The notes under the pieces were generated by a model. That model was not told where the DNA came from and did no database searches. It saw only the letters and a list, made by a program, of their open reading frames with translations. DNA of 64,000 bases. Origin: Diadema antillarum. Its lineage: Eukaryota. Location of the stretch: assembly GCF_040938485.1 (NCBI RefSeq), contig NW_027270984.1, positions 1,240,001-1,304,000 of the forward strand, read 5' to 3'. Each line of letters opens with the position of its first letter. Position 1 is the first letter of the stretch. Shown here piece by piece: positions 34,779 to 52,192 of this stretch. Both the position numbers and the translations under genes were made by a program.

Positions 34779-34784
34779 AACAAG
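34779..34784. repeat. left 6-bp target site duplication AACAAG
   Basis: identical hexamer at 52187-52192 abutting the right TIR. Confidence 0.95.
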
Positions 34785-35441
34785 AGTAGTATAGGTGTAC
34801 GTATAGCGTCATAAAAATATGATTCATATTTCTATTGTTCTAGAACAAAAGAAATATGAAAAGACAAAAGAATTATGAATTATGAAATATGGATTATGAT
34901 ATGATTTATGATAAAAAGATGGATTATGATATGATTTATGATAAAAATATGGATTATGATATGATTTAAGATAAAAAGATGGATTATGATATGAATTATG
35001 ATAAATCGATGAATTATGATAATAGATATGAATTATGGATATTTACATAACAATAGAAATTGGAAAGAACAAAAGAATGTATGAAATATGAAAAATGAAA
35101 GATGAATATTCATGAGATATGAATTATAGATATGAACGATGAATGATGATTATGAAATATGAATATTTATGGATCGATATGAAATATGAAGAATGAATTA
35201 TGAAAAATATGCTATTGTTTTAAGAATCCGCATCATTGTTTCATCATATTCTTTTGTTCTCACATCGAGAGATATTTTCGAAGGCAATGGTCGAAATGGT
35301 CATAATGACGATTGCAATCGTATTCATGACATTTGTTTGTTTGATGACGTCACTCCGACAAGTTCGGACCTGTCCTCTGACCAACGCTCGCCCGATCGAT
35401 AACAAAAGAACTTTAAAAATAAAGAAATACATAAAAATGGG
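34785..35441 (+). repeat. left terminal inverted repeat (657 bp)
   Basis: reverse complement of 51529-52186; 5 differences by eye (34969, 35383, 35400, and one substitution plus one indel near 35420). Confidence 0.95.
34891..35005 (+). repeat. 30-bp tandem repeat inside the TIR (about 3.8 copies; mirrored in the right TIR)
   Basis: GGATTATGATATGATTTATGATAAAAA(G/T)AT at 34891, 34921, 34951 and partial at 34981. Confidence 0.9.
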
Positions 35442-36671: not shown

Positions 36672-39600
36672 ATGTCTTCTCAAGAGTCACAGTCTCATTC
36701 TCAGAGAACCTCTAATTTCATTTCACAGTTAAAGAGTTTGTTGAGTTCAGCGTATAATTCGTTAACTAGCTCGCAAGTACAGACAACCGTCGACAAGGCC
36801 GTTGCCGAACTACAAGGCCATCTCCATTCTCCAGCCACTCCAAAGGGTCGAGAAAAGTCATCCTCGGTAAGTGAACGCAATACTAATCATTCGAGAGATG
36901 TGGGTTTAGATAATAGTAGGAGCGGGAGTTCCCCGAATGTCCCTGCCAACCAAGATATTCCGGGCCCGTCTCATCACCAAGGCCCTGGCACAAATTACAA
37001 AAGAAATCCTCGCGATGCACCGCCACCGCCGGTGAATTACTTTTCTTCGAGCGATGAGGAAATGTTTTCTTCTCCCGAAACGAAAAAGAATTCAAATAGG
37101 AAACGTTCAGGAAGCATTGGGAATCAGAGAGGGGGGAACGTGCAAAAGAGGGGTAAAAAACGGGTCAAGAGATCTTCCGAGAAAAATGAAGAGGGAAACC
37201 CAAAAAAGAAAAAATCGAAAGAAAATCACATTCCAGTGGAAGAGAATGAAGAAGACATGTTTTCGGACATTTCAGCTTCACTTCCCTCATCCCCCACTTG
37301 GGAATTCATAGATCAAAGAATGTCTAAGAGATTTGGGGTGAGGGAAGTGTGGTATGACTTCAAAGCAAACACAAAAGGTATTTCTAACATACGGGATATG
37401 ATTGACTACATTCGCTCATCGCTCGATGAACTGAAATCCTTACTCGTGTCTAACACTTCAGAGCGCGATTACATGCGTCTCGTATTAGTTTCGGAACAAC
37501 TCAACGTTCCGATCGCTTTCCCTTGGGCCCTGGTAAGAGATTTTGACGTAGAACTGATTCTAGAACGAATCGAGCAAGTGTTGAATAGCAACCAAGACTT
37601 TTTCATCAGTCCGGGATTCACTATAAGATTCCATCATGTGGTGAATCCCGCCGGTGGACGGGCGTCGAAATTCGACGGCCTTCCATCGCGTCTCGCGGCC
37701 CTCAAGAAGAAGTCGATAATCACAGTGCCGAGGGACGAAGATAACCTATGCTTTGCAAAGGCAATTGTCATTGCAAAACTGCGAAAAGAAAACGATAGGA
37801 GATACAGACTGTGGTCAAGAAATGACCGTAATACCACGACAAGACTCCGAAATGAGGCGCGGGAATTACACAGGTTGGCAGGGGTACCTGAGGGAGAAGT
37901 AGATCATTCACAGTATGACTCCTTTCAAAAAGTGCTCCTTCCAAAGTACAAACTGGTCATTTATAGAGGACGATATGAAGAAGCGTTAATCTACAGCGGT
38001 CCTCAGGCTTCTGATACCATTTATCTCTATCTGTCAGACCGTCATTACGACGTGGTTGCCAATCCATCGGCGTTCCTGTGCTCCAAATTTGTTTGCGACG
38101 AATGTCACGAAACATATCGCGATCCCAGATATCACGAGTGTTGCCACATGTGTCGCGATTGTCAATCGACCGATTGTGATCGCGATAGCTTTGGTGAAAC
38201 CGATCGCACGCTAGTATGCGAGAAATGTAACATGACGTTTCTAACCGTGAAATGCTTTCGAGCACATACTGTGAAATTATTCAACGGTAAAACAGCTTGT
38301 CAGAGGAATTTCAAATGTAACAAATGCAACAAGGTCTTTGACACGGATCTTGTTGATGGCGATTCCAAGAAACACAATTGCAACGAAATGAAATGCAATG
38401 TTTGTAAGCTTGTGGTCGACGGAAGGTATCACGATTGCTACATGCAAGTGACGAAAGAGAGTCCCTTCCACTCAAAAAACGTCAAGAAAAGTGAATCAAA
38501 CCCTCCTCAACAAGATCAAAAGTGTGAAAGTTCTGAAAGTGACTCGCAGTCCCAAGACAGAAAAGCTAAGAAATCTCCTACCAAGTATATATTCTTTGAT
38601 TTTGAGTGTACTCAAGAGACAGGATTACACATACCAAATTACGTGCACGCAACATGGGAATGCACGAATTGCATGGATAGGGAAATGTCGGCAGACACCT
38701 GCTGCGAACGATGCGGCCCTCCCGAAGACCGTGCCATAACATTTCAGGGAGCGAATACCCTTGATCTTTTCACAAACTGGTTGTTTTCTATGGAAAATCA
38801 CAACTCGGTAGCAATCGCACATAACTCAAAGGCGTATGATTCGTATTTCTTACTAAACAAACTAATAGAACAAGGGATCGAACCCCACGTAGTGATGAAT
38901 GGCGCTCAGATCATAAGTCTCGAAACACGGGAGCCAAAAATTAAGGTTAAAGACTCTTTAAATTTCTTTCAGATGCGGTTGGCAAAACTGCCCAAAACAT
39001 TTGGCTTGCAGGAAATGAAGAAAGGTTATTTTCCCCATTTTTTCAACACTCCCGATAATGCCAATTATGTAGGATCACTGCCAGACAAACGTTTCTATGG
39101 CGTGGATTCCATGATGAAAGCAGACCGAGAACAGTTTAATGCTTGGTACGATGAGCTCGCGCTAGCCAATTATGTCTTTAACTTTCAGGAGGAAATAAAA
39201 GCCTACTGCGAGAGTGATGTCAATATCTTGCACCAAAGCTGCAAGATATTTAGAAGACACTTCAAAAGTGTGAGCGCAACAGAGGCTAATCCCGAAGGAA
39301 TAGATCCATTCATGCGCTGTCTGACGCTTCCCAGCGCGTGCAATCTTTTGTTTCGAACGAACTACCTTAAGCCCAAGACAATCGCGCTCATTCCCCAGGA
39401 AGGGTATGGAAAGGGGAAAAGACAGTCCTCCTTAGCCGGAGAGTGGCTTCATTTTGAGGCACAGCTTTCAGGATTTCACATTCGACATAGTTTCAATGGT
39501 GGGGAAAGAAAAGCACACGGACGTTTCGTAGATGGCTATGCCGAAAAAGATGATGAAAAACATGTTTGGGAGTTTCTCGGGTGCTTTTATCACGGGTGTC

Positions 39601-41180
39601 GCGAATGTTACGGTCCCAGTGTCGAAAACCCAAAGCTAGGCAAAGCAATGGGTGTACTGTTTAATGAATCCATGAAACGTCTTGATGCGCTCAAAGAGAA
39701 TGGATATATTGTACACTATATTTGGGAATGCGAATGGAAACAATTGCGCCAAATGGCTGATGTACATCCACACATTGCACACCTTCAAATGGCTTTTAAT
39801 CAACAATTAAATCCACGTGACTCGTTCTATGGCGGGAGAACTGGAGGGTGTTCGCTCTTCTACGAGGCGAAGCCCGAAGAAAAAATCCTTTACTATGATT
39901 TCACCAGTCTTTATCCCTTTATCAATAAGTTCGGCAAATATCCTGTCGGCCATCCCAGAATTATCTATTCTAACTTCCCTTCACTGTCTCGAATTTTTGG
40001 ACTCGTCAAATGTAAAATATTACCTCCTAGACGTCTGTTTCATCCAGTGCTCCCCCATCGCTCAGGGGGTAAACTTACTTTCCCTCTATGCAGGACCTGT
40101 GCAGACACCTTGAATCAGGGGCCCTGCAAGCACGCAGATAGGGAGCGTGAGTTAGAAGGCGTGTGGGTATCGGAGGAACTGAAAAAAGCTGTAGAGATGG
40201 GGTATACACAACTCCGAATGATCGAAGTATGGCACTTTGACAGGTATACAGTGTACGATCCCAAAACAAGAACGGGAGGACTGTTTGCGCAGTATATAGA
40301 CAGCTTTATGAAAATAAAGCAGGAAGCCTCAGGCTACCCCGCCCATGCCAGTACTGAAGAAGAACGTGAAAAATACATTCGAGATTATTTGGCCCATGAG
40401 GGAATTCAATTAGACTCTAAAAACATCGCGAAAAACCCCGGTTTACGCGCCATTGCCAAGGGCATTGTTAATGTGCTGTGGGGGAAATTTGCTGAGAGAC
40501 CAAATCTGAAACAAACGCGCTTTGTCAAAACCAGCGCTGAGTTGTTAGATTTCTTAAAGGATCGCACTATCGAATTACAAGACATTCTCGTTCTAAACGA
40601 CGACATGGTAGAAATTCATTTCAATCAAGCCGAAGGCTTCGTGGACCACAACGTCAACACAAATATCATAATAGCCAGTTTCACGACGGCATTGGCGCGA
40701 CTGAAATTGTATTCTGTCTTGCAGAGGCTGAACGATAGGGTCTTGTATTACGACACTGATAGTGTAGTCTTTAGAACAGACCCAACAGTACAACATCACG
40801 ACCCCAAAACCGGCGATTTCGTTGGTGACTTGACGGATGAACTTGGTGAAGGCGAGTTCATTCAAACCTGGCTTTGCGGTGGTCCTAAGAACTATAGTTA
40901 TCGCACCAACAAAGGCAACACCGTGTGTAAGGTGCGTGGATTTACCTTGAACGAGGCAAACTCCCTCGTTATAAACCATGACTCTATGCGCGAATTGATA
41001 CAAGGTGAACCGGGATGTCTGAAGACTATTGTGGAAAATAGAATTCTCAGAGACGTAAAAAGCAAGTCCGTGTACACTTCCGAGAGAAAAAAAGACTACA
41101 GGGTAGTCTTCACGAAACGAGTTAGATTACCAGGTGGCACGACACTGCCTTATGGACACGCGGACATTCCTCGCTTATAA
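36672..41180 (+). CDS. pPolB: protein-primed family B DNA polymerase (terminal protein, OTU-like, Zn-finger, exonuclease, nuclease-like insert, polymerase), 1502 aa
   Basis: ExoI FFDFECTQ, ExoII HNSKAYD, ExoIII YCESD, motif A YDFTSLYP, motif B KGIVNVLWGKF, motif C YYDTDS; uninterrupted ORF. Confidence 0.97.
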   Translation: MSSQESQSHSQRTSNFISQLKSLLSSAYNSLTSSQVQTTVDKAVAELQGHLHSPATPKGREKSSSVSERNTNHSRDVGLDNSRSGSSPNVPANQDIPGPSHHQGPGTNYKRNPRDAPPPPVNYFSSSDEEMFSSPETKKNSNRKRSGSIGNQRGGNVQKRGKKRVKRSSEKNEEGNPKKKKSKENHIPVEENEEDMFSDISASLPSSPTWEFIDQRMSKRFGVREVWYDFKANTKGISNIRDMIDYIRSSLDELKSLLVSNTSERDYMRLVLVSEQLNVPIAFPWALVRDFDVELILERIEQVLNSNQDFFISPGFTIRFHHVVNPAGGRASKFDGLPSRLAALKKKSIITVPRDEDNLCFAKAIVIAKLRKENDRRYRLWSRNDRNTTTRLRNEARELHRLAGVPEGEVDHSQYDSFQKVLLPKYKLVIYRGRYEEALIYSGPQASDTIYLYLSDRHYDVVANPSAFLCSKFVCDECHETYRDPRYHECCHMCRDCQSTDCDRDSFGETDRTLVCEKCNMTFLTVKCFRAHTVKLFNGKTACQRNFKCNKCNKVFDTDLVDGDSKKHNCNEMKCNVCKLVVDGRYHDCYMQVTKESPFHSKNVKKSESNPPQQDQKCESSESDSQSQDRKAKKSPTKYIFFDFECTQETGLHIPNYVHATWECTNCMDREMSADTCCERCGPPEDRAITFQGANTLDLFTNWLFSMENHNSVAIAHNSKAYDSYFLLNKLIEQGIEPHVVMNGAQIISLETREPKIKVKDSLNFFQMRLAKLPKTFGLQEMKKGYFPHFFNTPDNANYVGSLPDKRFYGVDSMMKADREQFNAWYDELALANYVFNFQEEIKAYCESDVNILHQSCKIFRRHFKSVSATEANPEGIDPFMRCLTLPSACNLLFRTNYLKPKTIALIPQEGYGKGKRQSSLAGEWLHFEAQLSGFHIRHSFNGGERKAHGRFVDGYAEKDDEKHVWEFLGCFYHGCRECYGPSVENPKLGKAMGVLFNESMKRLDALKENGYIVHYIWECEWKQLRQMADVHPHIAHLQMAFNQQLNPRDSFYGGRTGGCSLFYEAKPEEKILYYDFTSLYPFINKFGKYPVGHPRIIYSNFPSLSRIFGLVKCKILPPRRLFHPVLPHRSGGKLTFPLCRTCADTLNQGPCKHADRERELEGVWVSEELKKAVEMGYTQLRMIEVWHFDRYTVYDPKTRTGGLFAQYIDSFMKIKQEASGYPAHASTEEEREKYIRDYLAHEGIQLDSKNIAKNPGLRAIAKGIVNVLWGKFAERPNLKQTRFVKTSAELLDFLKDRTIELQDILVLNDDMVEIHFNQAEGFVDHNVNTNIIIASFTTALARLKLYSVLQRLNDRVLYYDTDSVVFRTDPTVQHHDPKTGDFVGDLTDELGEGEFIQTWLCGGPKNYSYRTNKGNTVCKVRGFTLNEANSLVINHDSMRELIQGEPGCLKTIVENRILRDVKSKSVYTSERKKDYRVVFTKRVRLPGGTTLPYGHADIPRL

Positions 41181-41292
41181 AGACCTCAATGTGTCTAATT
41201 GCCAATCATTCGCTGTTTATACATTGTCGCAGAAGGTGGTACTTTCTCATCAGCTCTGTACCTACCGCTGGCATTGTCGTTGCTAGGAAATC

Positions 41293-41529: not shown

Positions 41530-41765
41530 TTGCAGCGCATTATACCGTTATGTTGCTCTTGAATATACCGCGTAGTTTTAACAGTTTGCTTCATATCGTC
41601 GTCTTATTCTTTTAAGAAACTTAACTGAACCCACATCTCACGTATGATAGAGTATTCCGTTCACTTACTTCGTTTGACATTTGCTCTAATTTCATTTACA
41701 GAACTTAATATCTTATTGTGTTATTCATATAGCTATATTTGTACTATTTGATGCCGTTAATTACA

Positions 41766-42407
41766 ATGGATGCCCGACTCAAACATAGTTTTTCATGTAT
41801 GGTGGTCGGACCGAGTTTTTCAGGGAAAACCGAATTCGTGAAAAGATTACTGAAAAATGCCTCGGAAATGATCGATCAACCTCCTCGCAAAATTATATGG
41901 TTTTACGGGGAGTATCAACCGTGTTACGCGACAATGACACGATCCTTTCCGAATATTGAATTTCATGAAAATTTACCAGCAGATTTCAATGATTTGACCG
42001 ACCCCTCCCGACCAGTGTTATTTGTCATCGATGATTTAATGGATGTGGCTGGTGATGACAAGAGAGTAGCCGCCTTGTTTACTAAAGGTTGTCATCATAG
42101 AAACGCGAGCGTTATTTATATCACTCAAAATCTCTTTCATCGTGGAAAGGAGTCTAGGACTATTTCATTAAACACGCAGTACTACGCTTTATTCAAAAAT
42201 TGTAGAGACAAACAACAAATTGCTTGTTTAGCTAAACAGATGTATCCCTCGAAAACAAAGTTTTTTCAAGAGGCATTTATGGACGCCACAGCCGATAAAT
42301 GGGGTTATTTATTCGTAGACCTTAAACCAGACACGCCGGAAGAATTTCGTCTCAGAACGAAAATATTTCCCGGTGAAGTTCAATATGTATATGTTCCTAA
42401 GATATAA
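41766..42407 (+). CDS. A32/FtsK-like genome-packaging ATPase (probable start MDARLKHSF, 213 aa)
   Basis: Walker A GPSFSGKT, Walker B LFVIDDLM, and TKGCHHRNASVIYITQNLF typical of Polinton ATPases. Confidence 0.95.
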   Translation: MDARLKHSFSCMVVGPSFSGKTEFVKRLLKNASEMIDQPPRKIIWFYGEYQPCYATMTRSFPNIEFHENLPADFNDLTDPSRPVLFVIDDLMDVAGDDKRVAALFTKGCHHRNASVIYITQNLFHRGKESRTISLNTQYYALFKNCRDKQQIACLAKQMYPSKTKFFQEAFMDATADKWGYLFVDLKPDTPEEFRLRTKIFPGEVQYVYVPKI

Positions 42408-42446
42408 ATTGTCGCGTTCGTGTATTAAGTCATTTATTAGTTAAAA

Positions 42447-42791
42447 ATGTCGCGCCGAGTGAAGACCCACGCAGTCCTGCTCAAGACCCTCGCACACTGC
42501 TCTCCTGATCAACGGAAACTTCTCATCAAGACAGCTAACAAGAACTTCATTGACGCCATCTGTGAATGTGTTTTGAACGTGATCTGCGGTAATGTCAAGC
42601 TGTCGCAATCCCACAAGAAAACTTTGACTAAGCACAAGCGAAAACTCCGTAAATTAGCGGATCGTCGTACATCTCTGGCAGAGAGAAAACGAATCTTAAA
42701 CCAACGCGGAGGATTCATTGGTCTCATTGCCAGGTTGATCACGCCTGTACTCGGAACTCTCGCTTCTAACCTCTTTGCATCGCCAAAGTAG
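42447..42791 (+). CDS. basic core protein with QRGG|F site and amphipathic tail (adenovirus pX-like; probably Maverick PM), 114 aa
   Basis: K/R-rich body, C-terminal NQRGGFIGLIARLITPVLGTL; position directly after the ATPase. Confidence 0.8.
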   Translation: MSRRVKTHAVLLKTLAHCSPDQRKLLIKTANKNFIDAICECVLNVICGNVKLSQSHKKTLTKHKRKLRKLADRRTSLAERKRILNQRGGFIGLIARLITPVLGTLASNLFASPK

Positions 42792-42818
42792 ACACTGTAT
42801 AGAGGTACCGCGTTGATA

Positions 42819-43586
42819 ATGGAGAATGCGCGCAAGATGGTGCTTGTGCCACAAACTATGCTTCATTCTCTCAAAAGTCAATCTTCATCACCTACAGAGC
42901 AGCGAATCAACGAATTGGACGATCAGATTCGTTCGGTGTTGGACAGGCCCGATCTACCAGAGTATGACAAGGCGTTGTTGTATTCGCAATACTTACAGCG
43001 GTTTTTGAAAGCGACGGACAACGTTAAGAAGCCATTGTCTATTGAAGTCGTTAGCGACAGCTCAAGAGACAATGACAGCACGCATCTAGTAACTCATGGA
43101 CAGAGGGTCGCGCCAAAATCTGAGGACGCAGTGGAGCGTGACATCTTGCAGCACGTGCCTAAGAATTTTGTGAAAAGAGCTTCGCAGTTGCTGGAAAAGA
43201 TGAAAAGGTGCGACGATGTGGGATGGACGGACAAAGGGGAGCTGATTGTGAGCGGGGAAAGTGTGCCTGGCAGTAACATTTGCGACTTAATGTACGACAT
43301 TTTCAGAGAGCGAAGTGGTTATATTCCTACTGGTAGTGAACATTTTATTCGTGCGCTGGCTCGTTTGAACATTCCAGAGACTGCGTTGACCAATCTCAGC
43401 CGACGTGACCAACTTCAACGTGTTAAGAGGGGGAAAGATTTGGAGACCCCGATTCATCGTCGTTTAGATTCTCCAGACCCCAAAATGTACACAACCCCTA
43501 CTACAACTAAAAGTTATACACGTACAAGGCGTACAAGAGCTAGTGATGCTAATGGTTCTCAAACCCCAAAGTGGCAATCTTTTTAA
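42819..43586 (+). CDS. conserved Polinton protein of unknown function (probably PW), 255 aa
   Basis: KMVLVP start, DKALLYSQYLQRF, WTDKGELIVSGESVPGSNICDL motifs that I recognise from Polinton accessory proteins; family name is my recollection. Confidence 0.75.
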   Translation: MENARKMVLVPQTMLHSLKSQSSSPTEQRINELDDQIRSVLDRPDLPEYDKALLYSQYLQRFLKATDNVKKPLSIEVVSDSSRDNDSTHLVTHGQRVAPKSEDAVERDILQHVPKNFVKRASQLLEKMKRCDDVGWTDKGELIVSGESVPGSNICDLMYDIFRERSGYIPTGSEHFIRALARLNIPETALTNLSRRDQLQRVKRGKDLETPIHRRLDSPDPKMYTTPTTTKSYTRTRRTRASDANGSQTPKWQSF

Positions 43587-44368
43587 AATACGGCTTAAAC
43601 GGTATGACCACAATCCTCGTTAACCCGAGCTGTTCTCGTTAATTCGTGTAATGATTTTATTGTATGTTAATTTACTACTCTTCTATTTCAAACAGTTATG
43701 TACAATTTTAAATAGTAGCCCTTACCATTATGATCTGCGTGTTGATCTAGGTGGGTGTTGAAGTACGCCATCGATGTTGCGTATGGGGTGATATGAAAGT
43801 GTGTACACAAGCATTTACATACTTAATATGTATCATTATATTTTACGAACGATGATTTTTTGATTGTATTAACGTTAACATCGTTACATATCCCCAACCA
43901 ATTATTTCATCAGGTGACCCGCAATGTGTATATAAGATTGTACGGTCTATGTTCAGATGTGAAGGAGTGTATACATACATAATATTCTGTTTGAATGTAT
44001 TTGAAATTTTGATGCTAGCTGTTCTTTTGAATTTGTCCGCATGATATAGCGATTGACTATACTATCTTAACGTTTCTCCACTTCAACATTTCATCGTCTG
44101 AACATTTCGACTAGTTGCTATGTAAATATTGTAAATATAAGTTCGTGTGACGTTTGATTTTATCTGTGGTGTTTACCGAATGTGTCATACATTTTATCTC
44201 CTGGCGTAGTTGTACATAATATGTCTTACTTCATGAAACGATGTAAATAGTCAAATCCTGCCTGGTTTATGCATTATTACATTCAGTGGTGAAAGTAGTT
44301 GTTTTTATTATTATTCGTAGTTAATTCCATAAAGACCGTCATATTGTACATATATCCACCACTTCGAC

Positions 44369-44478
44369 GTTTCGTCGATTCGTCATTTTGTCATTTCGTC
44401 ATTTCGTCATTTCGTCATTTCGTCATTTCGTCATTTCGTCATTTCGTCATTTCGTCATTTCGTCATTTCGTCATTTCG
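44369..44478. repeat. 8-bp tandem repeat (ATTTCGTC)n, 10 perfect units at 44393-44472
   Basis: direct reading; explains the periodic FVISSFRH ORF. Confidence 0.95.
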
Positions 44479-45105
44479 CTGTTTTAAATCTGTGCATGTA
44501 ACGCATGCAAATTTCTTTTTTTTTAATGTCTGTTTACCTAGAATTAATAACTTTGACGAAACGGAAATACACTGTAAAATGTCTCACGCAGATTCTGCAG
44601 ATTGATGACTACATCACCTCAATGGTTTATAAGTTGTTAATTATTCTTTCATCACCATGTATGATTTAAGCCATGCTTGAACATCGAAACATAATTGAAT
44701 AATGTATTGTATTTTTTATATGAGGAATAGTTCTTTACGTATCCAGTGGAAATGTATATAGTTTGTTCGTTGCACGGTGTAATGATTTTTTTCTCACAAT
44801 CACAAAACGTAGAAGGAAGCAAAGAAAAACAAGTACAACAAGGAGTAATTTATTTACATATTCATAGTCTGTTGTTTTATTGGAGAAAATAAAACGGGTA
44901 CCACGTACAATATTCTTACGATACAAAACGCACTCGTTACATCTTATTTTTGTTTTGTCCTGTGTGATATGTGTTATACAGCGTGACTGAGGAAAAGAGA
45001 AGCGAGAAAGAAAACGAAGAGCGAAAGAGAAAATGAGACATATACTCGTAACGAAAATAACAAAGTGTGTATTACTATGAAGAACGAAACCCAGCCCAAG
45101 TTTAA

Positions 45106-45140
<35 letters not shown>

Positions 45141-45338
45141 TTACCTAATTTTACAAAGTATTCAAGCGGTTGTTACGCTAGGTACGCTAACCTAAGTAAT
45201 ATATGGTCTATGAATTGTAAATGATAATATATTCCATTGGTAACAAACTGTCACAATCACTCAACGTTTCGACATAAAGGTACAAACTTAATTCTCTTAT
45301 TTTCAAACTAGCTTTCCCAGACATGAAAGAACATATAT

Positions 45339-45471
45339 NNNNNNNNNNNNNNNNNNNNNNNNNNNNNNNNNNNNNNNNNNNNNNNNNNNNNNNNNNNNNN
45401 NNNNNNNNNNNNNNNNNNNNNNNNNNNNNNNNNNNNNNNNNNNNNNNNNNNNNNNNNNNNNNNNNNNNNNN
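45339..45471. other. assembly gap (133 N) inside the Polinton
   Basis: run of N next to TA-rich sequence. Confidence 1.
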
Positions 45472-45587
45472 AGGCTTGCACATACGATATATACAAATTA
45501 CTACTAAGTTAAATACTGTTAGATATCTAGCAATCCACATCAAGAGAGAAGTTTACACTACGTTATACACGCTATTACAATATCTTC

Positions 45588-46109
45588 TTACAAACTATCG
45601 AAGCTACGTGCGATTTGTAATAGAGTAAAAGATGTATCATGAACACGATGGGAAACATCAGAACGTCGATTAAACCAATCATTCACTCTCTTATCATTTC
45701 TCGTATAATCCTTGCCAAACACATTTAATACACTTCGAGTTGTTTGACCCCCTACTCGTTTCGTCACGTAATAGATACAATATTGTCCGCAAACTGTGGA
45801 TACAGTTCCTTGTAGCCGTTTGGAATTAGAGGACCATGCCGAGGCATTATTGTCCAAAAACTTTACAAAGTCAAGACTGTAAGTTAAGGGTTCATATCCG
45901 TAAGAGTCAAAGAATTCGCCTTTTCCGTTGCAAAAGTAGAAAGCCACCCAGTGTGTTCCTGGTTTATCGCTAGGATCGGTATTCGCGATGAAGCATTGCT
46001 TCGCCCCACTAATTGATCGCGGTAGACAATTTGACGCATATACTCCTTTGAAATAGGGCTTGACAATAGGATCGTTCTCTAAGAAACGTTGAATCTGCGA
46101 TGTATCCAT
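45588..46109 (-). CDS. PRO: adenain-like cysteine protease (173 aa)
   Basis: NTDPSDKPGTHWVAFY (His), FFDSYG (Asp), LQGTVSTVCGQYC (Gln, Cys). Confidence 0.95.
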   Translation of the reverse strand: MDTSQIQRFLENDPIVKPYFKGVYASNCLPRSISGAKQCFIANTDPSDKPGTHWVAFYFCNGKGEFFDSYGYEPLTYSLDFVKFLDNNASAWSSNSKRLQGTVSTVCGQYCIYYVTKRVGGQTTRSVLNVFGKDYTRNDKRVNDWFNRRSDVSHRVHDTSFTLLQIARSFDSL

Positions 46110-46152
46110 AGTCGATTAGAATATTTCGGCAGTCGGTTGTCCGGAAGAGGTT

Positions 46153-47484
46153 TTATTGGTAATCGTAGATGATGTTTCTGCTTTTATCAATCTGAATCAG
46201 TCCTTGTCCTTCCGAGTAGACGATACAGTTGACGGTGTTTGGAATGGCCACGTCGAATTGTAGCTCTAAGCGCAGATTTCCTTGCTTGATGAGATTCAAG
46301 TGACATCCGTCAGATAGGTCGGGCGTAAGGTCGAATGCAAAAAGGGTATAACCTTCGCAGTATTCTTCTCGATTGATGTTAATTCCCTTGTCTACAAACA
46401 GTCGGTTGGTTCCCATGAATAGTGAATTGTAAGCGTGAATGTAACTTTGTCCAGCTCCCGCTGCAAAGCTAGGACGTAATGGTCTCATCGGCACCGTTTC
46501 TCCGTCAATAGTGAGGGAGATGAAGTTGAGGCGTAAATGTTTAAAGTTGAAGGGGTTCTTGCCAAAAGTACCGTTAAAGGCGTCTGTGTCAACGAATCCT
46601 ACGACCACCCGATTTGGTAACTGTCCGTGAAATAGATTGTCTTTATTAATCGACATGCTTCCTGCAGGAATGGAAAAGGACTTCACGTCTACTTTGTTGA
46701 CGGGGTATTTCGCGGTTGTCTTCTCCAAGGCCTTGGCGTGGTTTAACATGATGGTAGGACTGGTCTTTACTCTGCGAACGTAGAGGGCAGCAGATTCTAT
46801 TTTAATTTTATATCGGGCATTCTCCGTCGAAGACAGAAGACAAAATGCGTCTTTGCTACGATTTAACTTGATTTTCAAATCAACCCCCGGGAGTAACAGT
46901 CTTTCTTGAAAAAAAATGTCGGCGTAAATCGGACCAAGTAGAGAAAGTAATTTACTCTCGACGATGAATCCATGTCTTTTCGCCAGACCGGGATTAGCTT
47001 CTGCAGAGCTTGCCAGCGGGTTAACGACATCCATTTTCCCCGCTTTGTCCTTGTAATATAGCTGTTGAGTGAGTTGAGACTCTTTGGTCTCTCCTCCATA
47101 GTGCAGCAGAGATTCGATGTACGCTCTGTAAGGGTATGTATTCGACGGCTGAGACACTAGTTTTTCATTGAGCATGATATCAACTTGTGCAAAGAGAGAT
47201 GGGAGAAACAGGTTTACGGGACCAACTGGGGCATCAGCTGGTAAAGCCGTGTTATCATTGTTCGTAACTTTGACTGTCACTTGAAGCATGGTCTGAGAGA
47301 GGTCCAAGTATTCTTCCGACGTGCCGGACACGTTGAATTCAATGGGCCCTTCATCGGTGATGCTGCTAACGGGGTGATATTCTACCCATGGTCCTTTGAC
47401 GATGCTCATTTGAGTGTGTGGTACCGTGAACAAATCCAATTCGGACTTGCAGCAGACATCGCTCTTGTCGTGTAGAAGCGCCAT
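46153..47484 (-). CDS. PY: double-jelly-roll major capsid protein (probable start MALLHDKS, 443 aa)
   Basis: KSELDLFTVPHTQMSI, PIEFNVSG, LFSQ-like LFAQVDIMLN, YPYRAYIESLL, NPFNFKH, GYTLFAFDLTPD motifs of Polinton MCP. Confidence 0.95.
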   Translation of the reverse strand: MALLHDKSDVCCKSELDLFTVPHTQMSIVKGPWVEYHPVSSITDEGPIEFNVSGTSEEYLDLSQTMLQVTVKVTNNDNTALPADAPVGPVNLFLPSLFAQVDIMLNEKLVSQPSNTYPYRAYIESLLHYGGETKESQLTQQLYYKDKAGKMDVVNPLASSAEANPGLAKRHGFIVESKLLSLLGPIYADIFFQERLLLPGVDLKIKLNRSKDAFCLLSSTENARYKIKIESAALYVRRVKTSPTIMLNHAKALEKTTAKYPVNKVDVKSFSIPAGSMSINKDNLFHGQLPNRVVVGFVDTDAFNGTFGKNPFNFKHLRLNFISLTIDGETVPMRPLRPSFAAGAGQSYIHAYNSLFMGTNRLFVDKGININREEYCEGYTLFAFDLTPDLSDGCHLNLIKQGNLRLELQFDVAIPNTVNCIVYSEGQGLIQIDKSRNIIYDYQ

Positions 47485-47536
47485 GTTCAGCAAAGACAGC
47501 AAGGAGTGTATGAGACTGGTAAACGAATAGTCCGAA

Positions 47537-47977
47537 TTAATCGAAGATGTCGCGCAAGCGAGCTCTTTTCGCTGGAGAATTTCGAGACCGAATGATACGC
47601 TTCCTTCCTCGCCTCCTTCTTTTAACTCTTCCTACAACTACTAATCGCGCTCCTCCAGTCTGATTCCCAATTTTTTTCTTTACTGCTCGAACAGTCTTTG
47701 AGGCCAGGTGTTTTCCCGCCCGAGCCACATTTTTTCTAGTTGCGCTTTTAAAAGATTGTCCGTTGATGGTGTCCTGAACAATGTTCATGCCTGTATGCAT
47801 AGCTTCTTTTCCCAAAGCAACAGCCCCTCTTTTTAAGAGAGGAGTTGCGACTTTGAAGAGCCCCTTCACCAGACTACCCAGCCCGTGTCCTCTCTGCATG
47901 GATGCCCCGCGGAAGACGGGTAATCCCGAGCCATATTGGTCGTGAAAAATCCTTGCCGGTGCGCGAAATACCACCAT
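47537..47977 (-). CDS. core/lytic precursor protein (probably Maverick PZ), 146 aa
   Basis: QYGSGLPVFRG, QRGHGLGSLVKGLFK amphipathic segment, Arg-rich C-terminus; lies between the minor and major capsid genes. Confidence 0.85.
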   Translation of the reverse strand: MVVFRAPARIFHDQYGSGLPVFRGASMQRGHGLGSLVKGLFKVATPLLKRGAVALGKEAMHTGMNIVQDTINGQSFKSATRKNVARAGKHLASKTVRAVKKKIGNQTGGARLVVVGRVKRRRRGRKRIIRSRNSPAKRARLRDIFD

Positions 47978-48012
47978 AGTTGGACGTATCGCTGTGTAAA
48001 TTTAGCGTCCAG

Positions 48013-48774
48013 CTAGTTCGTAGAGCGCTCTCTAAAGTGTAACTTCACGATCACTTTCCCGCGTTCAAATGGTACCACTTCACCCGATTCGGTTGTTAAT
48101 ATAATCTCTATCGTTTCAAAATTGTAAAGCTTAAGAGGGACGTAATGCGGAGTGATATAGGTATTGACGATATTATCGCGATCCTTGTCCGGAATGACTG
48201 CTATCGTCCTCAGTAAAGGTACAGCAGCGTCACCTACGTGTTGAAACTGAACGATATCAGAATAGACATAAAATGTATGAAATTTCATGTGTACATCCAT
48301 TGGCATGGGACTCAGTGTTGATTCCGTGAGATGGCATTCCCCTTCAAACCCGAGCATCATAGCCAAACCACAGGGAATGAGGAGCGCCGTATTTCCTTCT
48401 AATCGGATGAAACATTTTCGTTGGGTCCTCTTGTAATAAAATGTGATGCTTTTACGTAATTTTCTCCGGAACTGTTCGTTGATCGAGTCAATGAGTTCCT
48501 CTCCAGAATTATAATATCCCGCAGGAATCTCAATTTTTTTCATCAATGGAACAGCGTCGTCCTCTACTTCATTATCGTAAATAGTGAGGGTGTTGTTATC
48601 ATGTCGTACATTATACCACGTGCACTGAAATTGAACTTCTGCCAACCCCACCTCGTAATCTTCGTTGAGTGAGAGAGGTGCGTGAAGCCGCGTTGTAAAC
48701 TGACACGTTTTGTTATTTGGATAGTACGACATGGAACTATTACTGGGCAGCGTCACGTAAAATTGAGAAGCCAT
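48013..48774 (-). CDS. PX: single-jelly-roll minor capsid (penton) protein, 253 aa
   Basis: FYVTLPSNSS...YPNN, YEVGLAEV, FYVYSDIV...VGD...PLLRTI, HYVPL, GKVIVKLHFR. Confidence 0.93.
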   Translation of the reverse strand: MASQFYVTLPSNSSMSYYPNNKTCQFTTRLHAPLSLNEDYEVGLAEVQFQCTWYNVRHDNNTLTIYDNEVEDDAVPLMKKIEIPAGYYNSGEELIDSINEQFRRKLRKSITFYYKRTQRKCFIRLEGNTALLIPCGLAMMLGFEGECHLTESTLSPMPMDVHMKFHTFYVYSDIVQFQHVGDAAVPLLRTIAVIPDKDRDNIVNTYITPHYVPLKLYNFETIEIILTTESGEVVPFERGKVIVKLHFRERSTN

Positions 48775-48841
48775 GTTCGATCAGCCTCTTCTCCTTTGTT
48801 CAAAGCGAAGAATGATAACGAGAGTAACGTGAATCGTGTTT

Positions 48842-49933
48842 TTAACGCGGAGTTAAGTGTCGAACCCAACTATCAAATTCTTTGCCATACCCTGACCAAC
48901 GAACTAGGTATTCTTTCTGCCCATTGCGCATGCGCGTGCGTAAAACCTTGTCCACGTTGTAAGTAGTCTCCTTGTCTTTCGAAACTCTTATCAATTCCCT
49001 TTCATAGAACGTACCCTTCACTCGTTCCCCGTTGTAATCCTTTATTCTGTAGACAGGTACCCTCCTATTGACGCGGGAGCTGATTGTAAAGACCTCCCTC
49101 GAAAAATTTGCTTCGTAACCCTTTTCGAACTTTAGTTTGCTTTTACTAATACGAACTTGATCTCCGATTTCATACTTGAATCGTGGAGCTGTACGCTTCT
49201 TCCCTCGCATTGCCCTACCGTAGAGACTTTTTATGGCACGCTTTTGATTCTCAATATTCACGTCTTTTGGTTTCATGCCAATACTAGAATGAATGGTGTT
49301 GTTATAGCCTTTGACCAAATCTTTTATTACACCGAGATACCTGTAAGTGTTTTTGAATGTGAAGAAGCGCCACATTTTTGTTCGCAGCGTTCTATTGAAT
49401 CGTTCAGCAACGCTGGCTTTGGTTTCATTTTCTGTTGTGTAGAAGTGAATGCCTTCTTTCTCGAGATATTTCTGAAAATGTCTGTTTGTGAATTCCGAAC
49501 CTTTGTCTGTATGTAGCATTACAGGCACTCGGCCCTCTTTCAAGATGCTTTCGAATGCCCCGACAATGTCTTTTGATTTTTTGTTTTTTAAAGGAACCAC
49601 CCAAGCATATTTCGACAGTACATCTATACACGTCAGTAAGTAGCGATAACCATTATTAAACCTTTTCAAATTTTGAACATCTACAAGATCAGCCTCCCAG
49701 ATTTCGTCGATTCCTCTCACTTTCACAACATTTCTCTTAAATGTCTTTCTCGCCGGTGCGTGCATTGAATACGCATCTTGTTTCGTTAACCAGTCTCTGA
49801 CACCCTGCAAGCTCGCTTTTTCAGTTTCCACCTCTCTCACCGCATTCCACAACTTACTGACACCACCGAAACTAGCTGGATGTTGAGGATCGTAATAGAT
49901 TTCCTCTAACGCTCTCTCAAATGAATTAGACAT
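48842..49933 (-). CDS. INT: retroviral-type DDE integrase with C-terminal chromodomain (probable start MSNSFE, 363 aa)
   Basis: IYYDP...SFGG, WEADLVD, LHTDKGSEF, KASVAERFNRTL; chromodomain YNVDKVL...EYLVRWSGYGKEFDSWV. Confidence 0.96.
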   Translation of the reverse strand: MSNSFERALEEIYYDPQHPASFGGVSKLWNAVREVETEKASLQGVRDWLTKQDAYSMHAPARKTFKRNVVKVRGIDEIWEADLVDVQNLKRFNNGYRYLLTCIDVLSKYAWVVPLKNKKSKDIVGAFESILKEGRVPVMLHTDKGSEFTNRHFQKYLEKEGIHFYTTENETKASVAERFNRTLRTKMWRFFTFKNTYRYLGVIKDLVKGYNNTIHSSIGMKPKDVNIENQKRAIKSLYGRAMRGKKRTAPRFKYEIGDQVRISKSKLKFEKGYEANFSREVFTISSRVNRRVPVYRIKDYNGERVKGTFYERELIRVSKDKETTYNVDKVLRTRMRNGQKEYLVRWSGYGKEFDSWVRHLTPR

Positions 49934-50120
49934 TATTCGTCTCAGCAACCACACACTGCAGAAGCAAACATCAGAAATGGCATTCCTTTCACATTGCAAT
50001 GACATAAAAGGCATCAATGATAGACAAGGTAACGAGTAAAAAAAATCATTTGAAAATGAAACGCATCATTTATTGTACACGCATACACACAGTGCAGCGA
50101 ATTTCGTTGCTTGAATCAAT

Positions 50121-51044
50121 TCACATTCTATTAACATCTACATTCCATACATTATACAACATATACAGACAAAAATGTAAAACGTATCGCGACATTAGTC
50201 CAACAGTCATTTTCGGAGCGTGTTCCGACCAGCGCACTTTGTAGCGTTTGAGTCCTTCCACGAATTGCGCGCGAAATTCCTCTTTCCGCTCGTCCGGTAT
50301 GCAGGCATATTGGTAGATGTTGACAAAATAGCATAGAGCCATCAGCGAACGTTTGTACTTGTTGGGATGATTGGGGTTCTCTATACAATTTTTGAGCAGG
50401 GCCTCTATACAATCGTCGAACCTCTCATTGCCTCGAAGCTTGATTCGTCGCACACGGGAAAATTGTTCCTCGCTTGCAATTGTCCGACATGCGCGTAAGA
50501 TTGTCTCGGTGTCTACGGCGTGAAAGTCGGAAGGAAATGTGTCCTTTATCACCGTTAATAGCAGTCGTTCGTCTAAAGCACGTTCCACTGAGGGTCCGTC
50601 AAGACAATGTCGGGCAGGCCGGTCTCGAGCCCCAAGGCCCTGTAGACCACTCTCACAGCGGCCTCTATCCCCTCCACGTGTCTCCCTATGTTGACTCTTC
50701 TTTGTTCCAGCTGCTGTTGAGTCTCTCCCCTCAGAATAAATTTGATGTACTCCAGGAAAAAACCGCACTCGACGAGATCTGGTCTCATCCAGAGCACCCT
50801 GCCAACGTAAGGGTACACTCTCTCCACAGTCATTGGGTCCAAATGATGAACCGCCTGGAACACTTTGCGCTGTGGATCTTCGGGAGTACCGTCTATTGGA
50901 GAATCTGGCACGTTTTGCACCCGTTTCAAGACTTCGATGAGAGTTAGATACTCCGTCAACATCAGCAAGTCCACCTTCTCCACCGTCCTCTGCATTTCGG
51001 GACACCAGGTGTTGGCGATATTCGGCTGAGACATTCTGTAACAT
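50121..51044 (-). CDS. accessory protein with C-terminal helical domain resembling the Bcl-2 fold (307 aa from ATG 51044, or 345 aa from ATG 51158)
   Basis: open frame; the last ~150 aa look protein-like, while the N-terminal part overlaps the 153-aa ORF and looks overprinted; start uncertain. Confidence 0.55.
   Translation of the reverse strand: MLQNVSAEYRQHLVSRNAEDGGEGGLADVDGVSNSHRSLETGAKRARFSNRRYSRRSTAQSVPGGSSFGPNDCGESVPLRWQGALDETRSRRVRFFPGVHQIYSEGRDSTAAGTKKSQHRETRGGDRGRCESGLQGLGARDRPARHCLDGPSVERALDERLLLTVIKDTFPSDFHAVDTETILRACRTIASEEQFSRVRRIKLRGNERFDDCIEALLKNCIENPNHPNKYKRSLMALCYFVNIYQYACIPDERKEEFRAQFVEGLKRYKVRWSEHAPKMTVGLMSRYVLHFCLYMLYNVWNVDVNRM
50573..51034 (-). CDS. accessory alpha-helical protein of unknown function (153 aa, MSQPNIANTW...)
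   Basis: ATG with A at -3, amphipathic helical composition, first substantial gene inside the right end. Confidence 0.65.
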   Translation of the reverse strand: MSQPNIANTWCPEMQRTVEKVDLLMLTEYLTLIEVLKRVQNVPDSPIDGTPEDPQRKVFQAVHHLDPMTVERVYPYVGRVLWMRPDLVECGFFLEYIKFILRGETQQQLEQRRVNIGRHVEGIEAAVRVVYRALGLETGLPDIVLTDPQWNVL

Positions 51045-51179
51045 GTGATGCTCTCGGAAGGTTTCAAATTGAAATGTGTCCCTCTCGCATGTTCTTCGAG
51101 TTTTTATTCTTTTGCTTTGCAAAGGACGCCACCATCTCTTTGAATATGTATGAGGCATCTATTGTTTTATGCAGGACGA

Positions 51180-51610
51180 GTCCGAACCCGTCACTGGCTC
51201 CAGGTCCAGTTTATGTATTTCTTTATTTAAAAATTCTTTTGTCTTCGCTCGCGTACAAGCGTGGGTCAGAGGACAAGTCCGAACTTATCGTGAACTTGAG
51301 GTCCAGTCTTATGTATTTCTTTGTTTTTCTAGTCTTTTGTCTTTGAGTGTGCGAGCGTCGGTCTGAGGACAAGTCCGAACTTATCGTGAACTTGAGGTCC
51401 AGTCTTATGTATTTCTTTGTTTTTCCAGTCTTTTGTCTTTAAGTCCCCGAGCGTTGGTCAGTGGACACGCCCTGACTTTTGTCTTCGATTGCGCAAGCAT
51501 TGCGCAAGCGTCGGTCAGAGGACACGCCCCCATTTTTATGTATTTCTTTGTTTTTTAAAGTTCTTTTGTTTTCGATCGGGCGAGCGTCGGTCAGAGGACA
51601 GGTCCGAACT
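51180..51610 (-). repeat. right subterminal ~96-97-bp repeats
   Basis: GTCCGAAC at 51180, 51277, 51373 and 51602 with ATGTATTTCTTT...CTTTTGT blocks; degenerate copies near 51465 and 51520. Confidence 0.85.
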
Positions 51611-52186
51611 TGTCGGAGTGACGTCATCAAACAAACAAATGTCATGAATACGATTGCAATCGTCATTATGACCATTTCGACCATTGCCTTCGAAAATATC
51701 TCTCGATGTGAGAACAAAAGAATATGATGAAACAATGATGCGGATTCTTAAAACAATAGCATATTTTTCATAATTCATTCTTCATATTTCATATCGATCC
51801 ATAAATATTCATATTTCATAATCATCATTCATCGTTCATATCTATAATTCATATCTCATGAATATTCATCTTTCATTTTTCATATTTCATACATTCTTTT
51901 GTTCTTTCCAATTTCTATTGTTATGTAAATATCCATAATTCATATCTATTATCATAATTCATCGATTTATCATAATTCATATCATAATCCATCTTTTTAT
52001 CATAAATCATATCATAATCCATATTTTTATCATAAATCATATCATAATCCATCTTTTTATCATAAATCATATCATAATCCATATTTCATAATTCATAATT
52101 CTTTTGTCTTTTCATATTTCTTTTGTTCTAGAACAATAGAAATATGAATCATATTTTTATGACGCTATACGTACACCTATACTACT
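51529..52186 (-). repeat. right terminal inverted repeat (658 bp)
   Basis: reverse complement of 34785-35441, ends ...CCTATACTACT. Confidence 0.95.
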
Positions 52187-52192
52187 AACAAG
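52187..52192. repeat. right 6-bp target site duplication AACAAG
   Basis: identical to 34779-34784. Confidence 0.95.

What the first reader, a model, noticed from the sequence alone, without database searches (positions are those of the whole stretch)
50121..50600. Candidate viral Bcl-2-fold protein at the right end of the Polinton
Seen: about 150 aa, all-helical, with a hydrophobic C-terminal tail. By-eye alignment to Bcl-2: RFDDCIEALLKN vs RFATVVEELFRD (helix 4); NKYKRSLMALCYF vs NWGRIVAFFEF (BH1); EGLKRYKVRW vs EYLNRHLHTW (helix 6/BH2); BH3-position helix ILRACRTIASEEQF; tail MTVGLMSRYVLHFCLYMLYNVW as anchor. The NWGR glycine is not conserved. Established: adenovirus E1B-19K and many dsDNA viruses use divergent Bcl-2 mimics. 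Inference: an integrated Polinton carries an apoptosis modulator, a host-manipulation function expected of a real virus rather than a transposon.
Basis: inference. Interest (0 to 1): 0.8.

Follow-up and report, generated by a model that had tools for sequence, protein, structure and literature searches.

The report
Polinton end gene, Bcl-2-like fold
The flagged stretch is a real, conserved protein domain: the C-terminal half of a roughly 307-residue protein from a pair of overlapping genes at the inner edge of a young Polinton's terminal repeat. Its predicted structure resembles Bcl-2 cell-death regulators more than any other fold, but no score reaches significance and no sequence-level search supports it.

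Summary
The element is a complete-looking 17.4-kb Polinton/Maverick (34785-52186) with identical 635-nt terminal inverted repeats (TIRs) and a 6-bp target duplication. The flagged 150 residues are not a gene on their own. They are the C-terminal domain of ORF-B (open 50121-51158, minus strand; 307 aa from the ATG at 51044). The 5' half of ORF-B overlaps a second, better conserved gene, ORF-A (50573-51034), which lies in another frame. Nine related loci share this layout, always with the same -1 frame relation, so it is natural and not a break. Both ORFs show purifying selection in their own frames. The family is tiny: 9 representatives among 1.84 billion proteins. It has no Pfam hit and no PDB sequence or profile hit. 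AlphaFold models of two members that are 34% identical (pLDDT 79 and 80) are all-helical. In the PDB and in a viral structure library, their best structural neighbours are almost only Bcl-2-family proteins (BAX, BHRF1, BALF1, GIV66, A1, F1L), with TM 0.41-0.66 and probability up to 0.87. No Foldseek E-value is below 0.36. The Bcl-2-fold reading is therefore partly supported, and the function is only inferred. Bcl2 homologues in adintoviruses (animal Polinton-like viruses) have already been reported, so this is a divergent new variant.

The parts
34779..34784 (.). left copy of the 6-bp target-site duplication (AACAAG)
   Evidence: the same hexamer directly flanks both TIR ends
34785..35419 (.). 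left terminal inverted repeat (starts AG)
   Evidence: 635 nt, 100% complementary to 51552-52186
36672..41180 (+). protein-primed family B DNA polymerase gene (1502 aa)
   Evidence: PF03175, E 6e-46
48842..50017 (-). integrase (rve core plus chromodomain), the gene directly downstream of ORF-B
   Evidence: PF00665 8.4e-14, PF00385 4.2e-07. The same neighbour is present in L001, L006 and L009, with an N-terminal fragment in L003/L004
50069..50074 (-). AATAAA polyadenylation-signal hexamer, 47 nt after the ORF-B stop
   Evidence: AATAAA or ATTAAA lies 45-124 nt after the stop in all 6 loci with enough downstream sequence
50121..51158 (-). ORF-B, open frame of 345 codons; the probable product is 307 aa from the ATG at 51044-51042
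   Evidence: Relatives P0003, P0005, P0006 and P0012 are 288-307 aa
50124..50573 (-). conserved helical C-terminal domain of ORF-B (the finding); predicted Bcl-2-like fold
50573..51034 (-). ORF-A, 153 aa from its conserved Met. It lies in the frame one base downstream of ORF-B's frame and falls wholly inside the 5' half of ORF-B. Function unknown
   Evidence: 46-87% identity to relatives, 38 invariant columns. Codon-position differences 0.09/0.05/0.37 against the Diadema copy
51102..51108 (-). TATA-like AATAAAA, about 70 nt upstream of the ORF-A ATG
   Evidence: TATAAA at the matching position (75-78 nt upstream) in 5 of 7 loci; the window has this variant there
51202..51467 (.). subterminal array of about 96-nt repeats (2.8 copies), upstream of the gene pair; mirrored at 35357-35592
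51552..52186 (.). right terminal inverted repeat (ends CT)
52187..52192 (.). right copy of the 6-bp target-site duplication (AACAAG)

Best explanation
The flagged stretch is the folded C-terminal domain of ORF-B. ORF-B is one of two overlapping genes (ORF-A 50573-51034; ORF-B 50121-51044/51158, minus strand). Together they form the outermost, inward-facing transcription unit of a recently integrated Polinton/Maverick (adintovirus-like) element in what is probably a sea-urchin genome.

Shown: both reading frames are conserved and under purifying selection. The -1 frame relation is the same in nine loci. Frame B is kept free of stops across ORF-A in most lineages. The ORF-B domain is predicted to be an all-helical bundle whose nearest structural neighbours are Bcl-2-family proteins.

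Inferred: one mRNA runs from a TATA-like box to a poly(A) signal placed before the integrase gene. It carries two start codons 10-32 nt apart, and leaky scanning yields ORF-A (153 aa) and ORF-B (307 aa). ORF-B would then be a Gly/Ser/Pro/Arg-rich, probably disordered N-terminal half created by overprinting on ORF-A, followed by the helical domain.

Inferred: the domain acts as a very divergent viral-type Bcl-2 mimic. It would be held at membranes or regulated by its C-terminal hydrophobic helix, and it would bind the host's pro-death Bcl-2-family proteins so that the cell survives while the element replicates.
For: Element identity: pPolB, A32-like ATPase, adenoviral-type C5 protease, rve+chromo integrase; identical 635-nt TIRs; AG...CT termini and a 6-bp target duplication.

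Gene reality: 9 representatives plus P0012 and P0001. Domain codon-position differences are 0.18/0.14/0.37; ORF-A's are 0.09/0.05/0.37.

Layout: frame B is A minus 1 in WIN (the window's copy) and in L001, L002, L003/L004, L005, L006, L007, L008 and L009. Frame B has 0 stops across ORF-A in WIN, L001 and L002, against 5.1, 2.6 and 5.8 expected from synonymous-codon shuffles (P 0.0002, 0.03, 0.0002). In WIN no codon ends in T before an AA/AG/GA-starting codon (0 of 40), against 25 of 112 before other codons. A frame-B ATG lies -10 to +32 nt from the ORF-A ATG in 5 of 7 loci and gives products of 288-307 aa. In the pairs where both loci keep frame B open, third-position divergence of ORF-A is lower than in the non-overlapping domain (0.25 vs 0.47; 0.42 vs 0.62).

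Transcription signals.

Fold: model 1 has pLDDT 78.7, pTM 0.71 and 8 helices. Its top PDB hit is the mouse BAX monomer, TM 0.54/0.52 over 145 columns, probability 0.75, and 24 of the top 50 hits are Bcl-2 family. In the viral library, BALF1 gives TM 0.66/0.50 at probability 0.75, and A9, an F1L homologue, an iridovirus Bak-like protein and BoHV-4 vBcl-2 give 0.44-0.51. Model 2 (P0004, pLDDT 80.2) hits GIV66 at probability 0.87 and BHRF1 at 0.85, and 28 of the top 50 hits are Bcl-2 family.

Conservation: invariant residues R75, C81 and Y82 sit in the long central helix, F104 sits in the next helix, and Y111 and W115 follow directly after it.

Precedent: adintovirus Bcl2 homologues (PMC8502044).
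Against: No Foldseek match reaches E 0.001 (best 0.36), and RMSDs are 4-8 A. There is no Pfam Bcl-2 or E1B-19K hit at E<=1 in 13 members. The PDB profile search found nothing at E<=10. The models rest on only 11 sequences. Residues 110-126 and the tail have pLDDT 54-73. No helices equivalent to the two short ones before the tail of canonical Bcl-2 proteins are predicted. The window's tail is only moderately hydrophobic (1.11).

Two loci (L006 Diadema, L007) carry 4 and 3 stops in frame B across ORF-A and lack the frame-B start. The long form of ORF-B is therefore not universal, and the route by which the domain is expressed there is unknown. There are no transcript or peptide data. Function is entirely inferred.
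Confidence: 0.5

Rival explanations
1. The domain is a Polinton-specific helical-bundle protein with no relation to Bcl-2. The structural likeness would be a by-product of a shallow-alignment AlphaFold model and of the many Bcl-2-family chains in the PDB. Its role would lie in the element's own biology, for example a replication or terminal-repeat-binding factor, a transcription regulator or an integrase partner, in keeping with its fixed position between the TIR and the integrase gene.
For: All Foldseek E-values are >=0.36. No sequence or profile search returned a Bcl-2-family match. The synteny TIR, then A/B pair, then integrase is conserved. The N-terminal half of ORF-B in the window is basic (pI 10.0).
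Against: Two models from sequences 34% identical, searched against two different libraries, all put Bcl-2-family proteins first, and nothing else exceeds TM 0.32-0.40. The match to BAX covers the whole chain in sequence order (145 columns, TM 0.54).
Confidence: 0.33
2. ORF-A and the ORF-B domain are made as one fusion protein of about 300 aa, through -1 ribosomal frameshifting or a short intron near the end of ORF-A. In that case the open upstream part of frame B would be irrelevant.
For: The frame relation is -1 in all nine loci. Two loci have stops in the upstream part of frame B but an intact domain. There is no conserved Met at the start of the domain.
Against: No canonical slippery heptamer lies in the ORF-A frame near its end in any of six loci. 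Frame B is kept stop-free over about 150 codons far beyond chance in several lineages. A frame-B ATG sits next to the ORF-A ATG in 5 of 7 loci. No tool predicted an intron here, and I tested no splice model and built no joined product.
Confidence: 0.1
3. One reading: a free-standing protein of about 150 aa, translated from a start at the beginning of the domain.
For: The gene caller reported a 144-aa product starting at a Met at the domain boundary in L008 (P0004). L006 and L002 also have a Met just before the domain.
Against: The window has no ATG between 51044 and the domain. In L008 frame B is in fact open over the whole contig. Met at that position is not conserved.
Confidence: 0.06
4. Chance ORF or decayed pseudogene with no product.
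For: None beyond the absence of database annotation.
Against: Relatives are conserved at 27-68% identity. Third-position-biased substitution is seen. The other two frames of the domain carry 10 and 4 stops. The TIRs are identical and all neighbouring genes are open.
Confidence: 0.01

Closest known systems
Bcl-2 family, cellular and viral (hits returned by the tools: BAX, BAK, BOK, Bcl-xL, Mcl-1, A1/Bfl-1; EBV BHRF1 and gammaherpesvirus BALF1, iridovirus GIV66, poxvirus F1L, M11L, FPV039, CNP058, ORFV125)
   Same: Size of about 150 residues. Predicted all-helical bundle with a long, conserved, hydrophobic central helix and a C-terminal hydrophobic helix. Best structural neighbours in the PDB and in BFVD (TM 0.41-0.66). 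Carried by a dsDNA virus-like element.
   Different: No detectable sequence or profile similarity and no BH-motif match by Pfam. The two short helices before the tail are not predicted. The domain is preceded by about 157 residues encoded by overprinting on another gene. All structural scores are below significance.
Adintovirus 'Bcl2' and 'IAP' homologues (Starrett et al. 2021, PMC8502044)
   Same: Animal Polinton/Maverick-like elements with adenovirus-like virion genes and a retroviral-type integrase are reported to carry homologues of anti-apoptotic proteins.
   Different: Those were recognised by sequence or HHpred-type searches, whereas this family gives no such hit. I could not compare sequences, because the paper's supplementary maps were not consulted and viral comparators may not be fetched.
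Adenovirus E1B 19K/55K gene pair
   Same: By analogy only: a transcription unit next to the terminal repeat, two proteins read from overlapping frames of one mRNA through alternative start codons, and one product a very divergent Bcl-2-like death inhibitor.
   Different: No Pfam Adeno_E1B_19K match at E<=1, and no adenoviral protein appears among the top 50 BFVD matches. Here the Bcl-2-like part belongs to the longer ORF, and the shorter ORF lies wholly inside it. Homology is untested.
BCL2-like motif in the giant planarian LTR retrotransposon Burro (PMC6431247)
   Same: A mobile element of an invertebrate carrying an apoptosis-regulator-like module.
   Different: Different element class. There the motif is recognised by sequence inside a giant polyprotein.

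Membership tests
Bcl-2 family (fold level) | Globular bundle of 7-9 helices around a central hydrophobic helical hairpin, in the canonical helix order | tested here: inconclusive
   Two AlphaFold models (pLDDT 78.7 and 80.2). Top PDB and BFVD neighbours are Bcl-2-family proteins at TM 0.41-0.66 and probability up to 0.87, but all E-values are >=0.36.
Bcl-2 family (sequence level) | BH1/BH2 (and BH3/BH4) motifs recognisable by the Pfam Bcl-2 models or by similarity to solved members | tested here: not met
   No Pfam hit at E<=1 in 13 members. The PDB phmmer search at E<=10 gave only two unrelated chains, and the PDB profile search at E<=10 gave none.
Bcl-2 family | C-terminal transmembrane anchor (present in many members, not all) | tested here: inconclusive
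   A conserved hydrophobic C-terminal helix followed by a polar end. The best 19-residue hydropathy is 0.8-2.2 across 12 members, 1.11 in the window, and at or above 1.6 in only 2. Model confidence there is 54-73.
Bcl-2 family | Surface groove that binds BH3 helices; control of mitochondrial outer-membrane permeabilisation | not testable with these tools
   No coordinates, no residue-level superposition, no binding data.
Adenovirus E1B 19K (Pfam Adeno_E1B_19K) | Match to the family profile | tested here: not met
   No hit at E<=1. No adenoviral protein in the top 50 BFVD structural matches.
Polinton/Maverick (adintovirus-like) element | Protein-primed family B polymerase plus retroviral-type integrase | tested here: met
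   PF03175 6e-46; PF00665 8.4e-14 with chromodomain.
Polinton/Maverick (adintovirus-like) element | Adenoviral-type cysteine protease and A32/FtsK-type packaging ATPase | tested here: met
   PF00770 at 2.6e-4, 21.2 bits against a cut-off of 21.3, so borderline. PF04665 at 2.2e-5, above its cut-off.
Polinton/Maverick (adintovirus-like) element | Long terminal inverted repeats, AG...CT termini, 6-bp target-site duplication | tested here: met
   635-nt TIRs at 100%; AACAAG on both sides and AG/CT ends.
Polinton/Maverick (adintovirus-like) element | Double and single jelly-roll capsid genes | not tested
   The 449-aa ORF (46153-47502) is 77% identical to the 'F54H12.2-like' part of P0001 but has no Pfam or PDB sequence hit. 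No structure was predicted for it.
Overlapping (overprinted) viral gene pair expressed by leaky scanning | Two long ORFs in different frames, both conserved, with closely spaced start codons on one transcript | tested here: inconclusive
   Conservation and stop-avoidance statistics support dual coding in 6 of 8 loci. Start codons lie 10-32 nt apart. Two loci lack the long ORF-B. No transcript data.

The most novel reading that the evidence does not exclude
The terminal A/B cassette of this echinoderm Polinton would be the evolutionary counterpart of the adenoviral E1B unit. That is, an early, repeat-proximal, dual-coding mRNA whose products include a Bcl-2-fold death inhibitor, inherited from the common ancestor of Polintons/adintoviruses and adenoviruses rather than captured from a host. 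This would place viral Bcl-2 mimicry and the overlapping-frame design in the Polinton-like ancestors that current models propose for adenoviruses.
Probability: 0.1. Interest if true: 0.85.

Novelty: new variant of a known kind. Interest (0 to 1): 0.55.

Why it matters
If the fold assignment holds, this is a sequence-orphan Bcl-2-like protein carried by an apparently intact, very young Polinton of an invertebrate deuterostome. That would add to the case that animal Polintons/adintoviruses carry accessory genes aimed at host cell death. It would also give a small family (about ten known members, all next to the integrase at the element's end) on which to study how far Bcl-2-like folds can diverge.

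Whatever the fold, the pair of overlapping genes is a clear case of overprinting in a eukaryotic virus-like transposon. It shows statistically supported stop-codon avoidance, and gene callers and an NCBI gene model have mis-annotated it. Transcript and peptide data would settle how the overlapping pair is expressed.

Tried and rejected
1. Broken gene. I first suspected a gene broken by a frameshift mutation, because two frames are used in the window. I rejected this: the same two-frame layout with the same -1 relation recurs in nine loci, down to 27% identity.

2. Programmed -1 frameshifting. No conserved slippery heptamer was found.

3. Tail as intron read-through. The Diadema gene model P0001 splices out of the ORF before the tail, which suggested this. 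I rejected it because the tail and its polar end are conserved in all full-length relatives.

4. Sequence routes to a named family. Pfam on each ORF and on all members, and PDB phmmer and profile searches for both ORFs, gave nothing meaningful. One member gave a lone Cnd3 hit (4.4e-5), which I did not follow.

5. Rb-binding 'Oncoid' motifs (LxCxE, paired CxxC) in ORF-A, ORF-B and five other ORFs of the element: none.

6. Residue-level comparison with BH1/BH2. This was not possible.

I dropped them and did not send them to another remote tool afterwards., sent in the same batch, had already included them.

Full report
**What is at the coordinates**

On the minus strand an ORF runs from 51158 to a stop at 50121-50123 (345 codons). 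A second minus-strand ORF in another frame (listed as 50573-51067, 164 aa) overlaps the upstream half and looks like an ordinary globular protein. The upstream half of the long ORF is rich in Arg, Gly and Ser.

**The element**

- Pfam identifies a protein-primed family B polymerase (36672-41180), an A32-like ATPase (41739-42407), an adenoviral-type C5 protease (45588-46109, borderline score) and an rve integrase with chromodomain (48842-50017).
- The element is bounded by 635-nt TIRs at 34785-35419 and 51552-52186 that are 100% complementary.
- It has subterminal arrays of about 96-nt repeats, AG...CT termini and a perfect 6-bp target duplication, AACAAG.
- It is therefore a 17,402-bp Polinton/Maverick of very recent insertion.
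- All long ORFs are open. I found no broken gene in it.
- One stretch of 133 N lies between 43587 and 45588. I left it as it is.
- The gene under study is the outermost gene at the right end. It reads inward and is followed by the integrase gene.

**Relatives**

- The word search with the natural 345-aa ORF, restricted to residues 196-345, found one protein, P0001. This is a 531-aa Diadema setosum gene model named 'F54H12.2-like'. Its first 86 residues are 74% identical to residues 32-116 of the flagged piece, and the rest is 77% identical to the window's 449-aa ORF at 46153-47502.
- The exhaustive HMMER search of 1.84 billion representatives with the 150-aa piece found only 9 proteins at E<=0.001. 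A profile word search added P0012.
- The full-length relatives are 288-307 aa, and the flagged piece aligns to their C-terminal halves, tail included.
- The other ORF has its own relative, P0002, at 63% identity.

**Layout in relatives**

I looked up the DNA around these proteins with flanks of at most 1500 nt (L001-L009). WIN denotes the window's copy.

- In WIN, L001, L002, L003/L004, L006, L007, L008 and L009, an ORF-A of 145-160 aa starts at a conserved Met. The ORF-B domain follows, in the frame one base upstream (-1). L005 keeps only the C-terminal part of ORF-A but has the same frame relation.
- A layout shared down to 27% identity is a natural design and not a break.
- ORF-A is the selected frame in the overlap. 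Against the Diadema copy, differences per codon position are 0.09/0.05/0.37 at 87% amino-acid identity. The same DNA read in frame B is only 57% identical.
- The domain is selected in frame B (0.18/0.14/0.37; 68% identity).
- Frame B is nevertheless kept open across ORF-A. There are no stops in WIN, L001, L002 and L008, and none downstream of the frame-B ATG in L003/L009. Synonymous-codon shuffles expect 5.1, 2.6 and 5.8 stops (P 0.0002, 0.03, 0.0002). In WIN no codon ends in T before an AA/AG/GA-starting codon (0 of 40), against 25 of 112 elsewhere.
- A frame-B ATG lies -10 to +32 nt from the ORF-A ATG in five of seven loci and gives products of 288-307 aa. In the window this is the ATG at 51044, giving 307 aa.
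- In pairs where both loci keep frame B open, ORF-A third positions diverge less than third positions of the non-overlapping domain (0.25 vs 0.47; 0.42 vs 0.62). This is expected under dual coding.
- Two loci (Diadema L006 and L007) carry 4 and 3 stops in that part of frame B and lack the start. The long form is therefore not universal.
- No canonical slippery heptamer is conserved.
- TATAAA sits 75-78 nt upstream of the ORF-A ATG in five of seven loci. The window has AATAAAA at about the same place, 51102-51108.
- AATAAA or ATTAAA follows the ORF-B stop by 45-124 nt in all six loci with enough downstream sequence. In the window it is at 50069-50074.
- The overprinted half of ORF-B is 32-45% Gly/Ser/Pro/Thr and only 17-22% hydrophobic. 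The domain is 41-45% hydrophobic.

**The Bcl-2 question**

- Sequence methods give nothing. There is no Pfam family at E<=0.1 for the window proteins, and no Bcl-2 or E1B-19K family at E<=1 for any of 13 members. The PDB phmmer search at E<=10 found only two unrelated chains, and the PDB profile search at E<=10 found none.
- AlphaFold2 on the window's domain with an 11-sequence alignment gave mean pLDDT 78.7, pTM 0.71 and eight helices. Confidence is low at residues 110-126 and in the tail.
- Foldseek against the PDB gave no E<=0.001. The top hit is the mouse BAX monomer (E 1.2, probability 0.75, TM 0.54/0.52 over 145 columns). By my count 24 of the top 50 are Bcl-2-family chains (BAX, Bcl-xL, Mcl-1, FPV039, GIV66, F1L), while unrelated hits have TM below 0.32.
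- Against the viral library, every hit with TM>=0.42 is a viral Bcl-2 homologue. These are BALF1 at 0.66/0.50 and probability 0.75, and A9, an F1L homologue, an iridovirus Bak-like protein and BoHV-4 vBcl-2.
- A second model, with P0004 as target (34% identical to the window domain; pLDDT 80.2, pTM 0.68), gave 28 Bcl-2-family chains in the top 50. These include GIV66 (E 0.36, probability 0.87), BHRF1 (0.85), A1, CNP058, BAX, BAK, ORFV125, M11L and BOK, at TM 0.41-0.49.
- The likeness is therefore specific and reproducible but below formal significance. It rests on models from a shallow alignment.
- The invariant columns are R75, C81, Y82, F104, Y111 and W115. R75, C81 and Y82 fall in the long central helix, F104 falls in the helix after it, and Y111 and W115 lie just beyond that helix. 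Whether R75 and W115 correspond to the BH1 Arg and the BH2 Trp could not be tested.
- The tail is conserved as a hydrophobic helix with a polar end, but its hydropathy reaches the usual membrane-span level in only 2 of 12 members.

**Literature**

- Starrett et al. [quoted passage not shown]
- A BCL2-like motif is also described in the planarian Burro retrotransposon (PMC6431247).
- I found no paper on this family, on 'F54H12.2', or on overlapping genes in sea-urchin Polintons.

**Verdict**

- My estimates: about 0.6 that the domain has a Bcl-2-like fold, about 0.35-0.4 that it modulates cell death, and about 0.75 that ORF-B is translated as a protein of about 300 aa overlapping ORF-A in most lineages.

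- I built no joined, consensus, repaired or ancestral sequence. No query mixed two frames. Counts of stops in relatives are given without places.
- The loci of relatives were fetched by look-up of proteins returned by the searches. They come from metagenome or run assemblies and from the Diadema genome. None is a record of a named virus, and only the gene with short flanks was taken (7.2 kb for the Diadema gene model).
- I did not scan the viral contig collection and fetched no named viral comparator.

Noticed in passing
L006:1501-5675 (Diadema setosum OZ188191.1); window 47500-47545 and about 50240: The NCBI gene model P0001 is a two-exon GT-AG model. Its donor lies inside ORF-B, just before the tail, and its acceptor lies a few codons upstream of the ATG of the capsid-like 449-aa ORF, so it skips the integrase and two other ORFs. 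The same donor-like GTGCGC and the acceptor-like TTTACCAG (33 nt upstream of the ATG) are present in the window. This is either an annotation artefact or a hint that a leader from the terminal unit is spliced onto late mRNAs.
   Followed up: partly
window 43587-45588: A stretch with no ORF of 90 codons or more inside the element, GC 0.31. It holds 133 N (assembly gap or masked; left as is), an 8-nt tandem repeat at 44370-44478 and an (AT)n run at 45110-45138.
   Followed up: no
window 34885-35021 / 51950-52086 and 35357-35592 / 51202-51467: The TIRs contain 30-nt tandem repeats (4.6 copies). They are followed inward by arrays of about 96-97-nt repeats (2.4-2.8 copies, 85% matches). These may be protein-binding or promoter elements directly upstream of the A/B gene pair.
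   Followed up: no
L009 (ena:ERZ27290340:k119_95441): The relative P0012 sits at one end of a 17,375-nt metagenomic contig, almost the length of the window's element (17,402 bp), and is followed by an rve+chromo integrase. I took only 2.6 kb of it. A contig of about element length, with the A/B pair at its end as in the window, could be a whole element; this was not examined.
   Followed up: no
window 36672-41180: The polymerase ORF is 1502 aa, but the best Pfam DNA_pol_B_2 stretch only begins at residue 707. Roughly the first 700 residues have no family assignment; they could be a terminal-protein or other replication module.
   Followed up: no
window 46153-47502, 47537-47977, 48013-48774, 42813-43586, 35788-36303: Five further open ORFs of the element have no secure family. 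The 449-aa ORF is the 'F54H12.2-like' protein, probably the major capsid protein by position and size, but it has no Pfam or PDB sequence hit. The 257-aa ORF has only a sub-threshold AbiEi_4 hit. None has LxCxE or paired CxxC motifs.
   Followed up: partly
alignment A2: One family member gave a lone Pfam Cnd3 (condensin subunit, helical repeat) hit at E 4.4e-5. No other member shares it.
   Followed up: no
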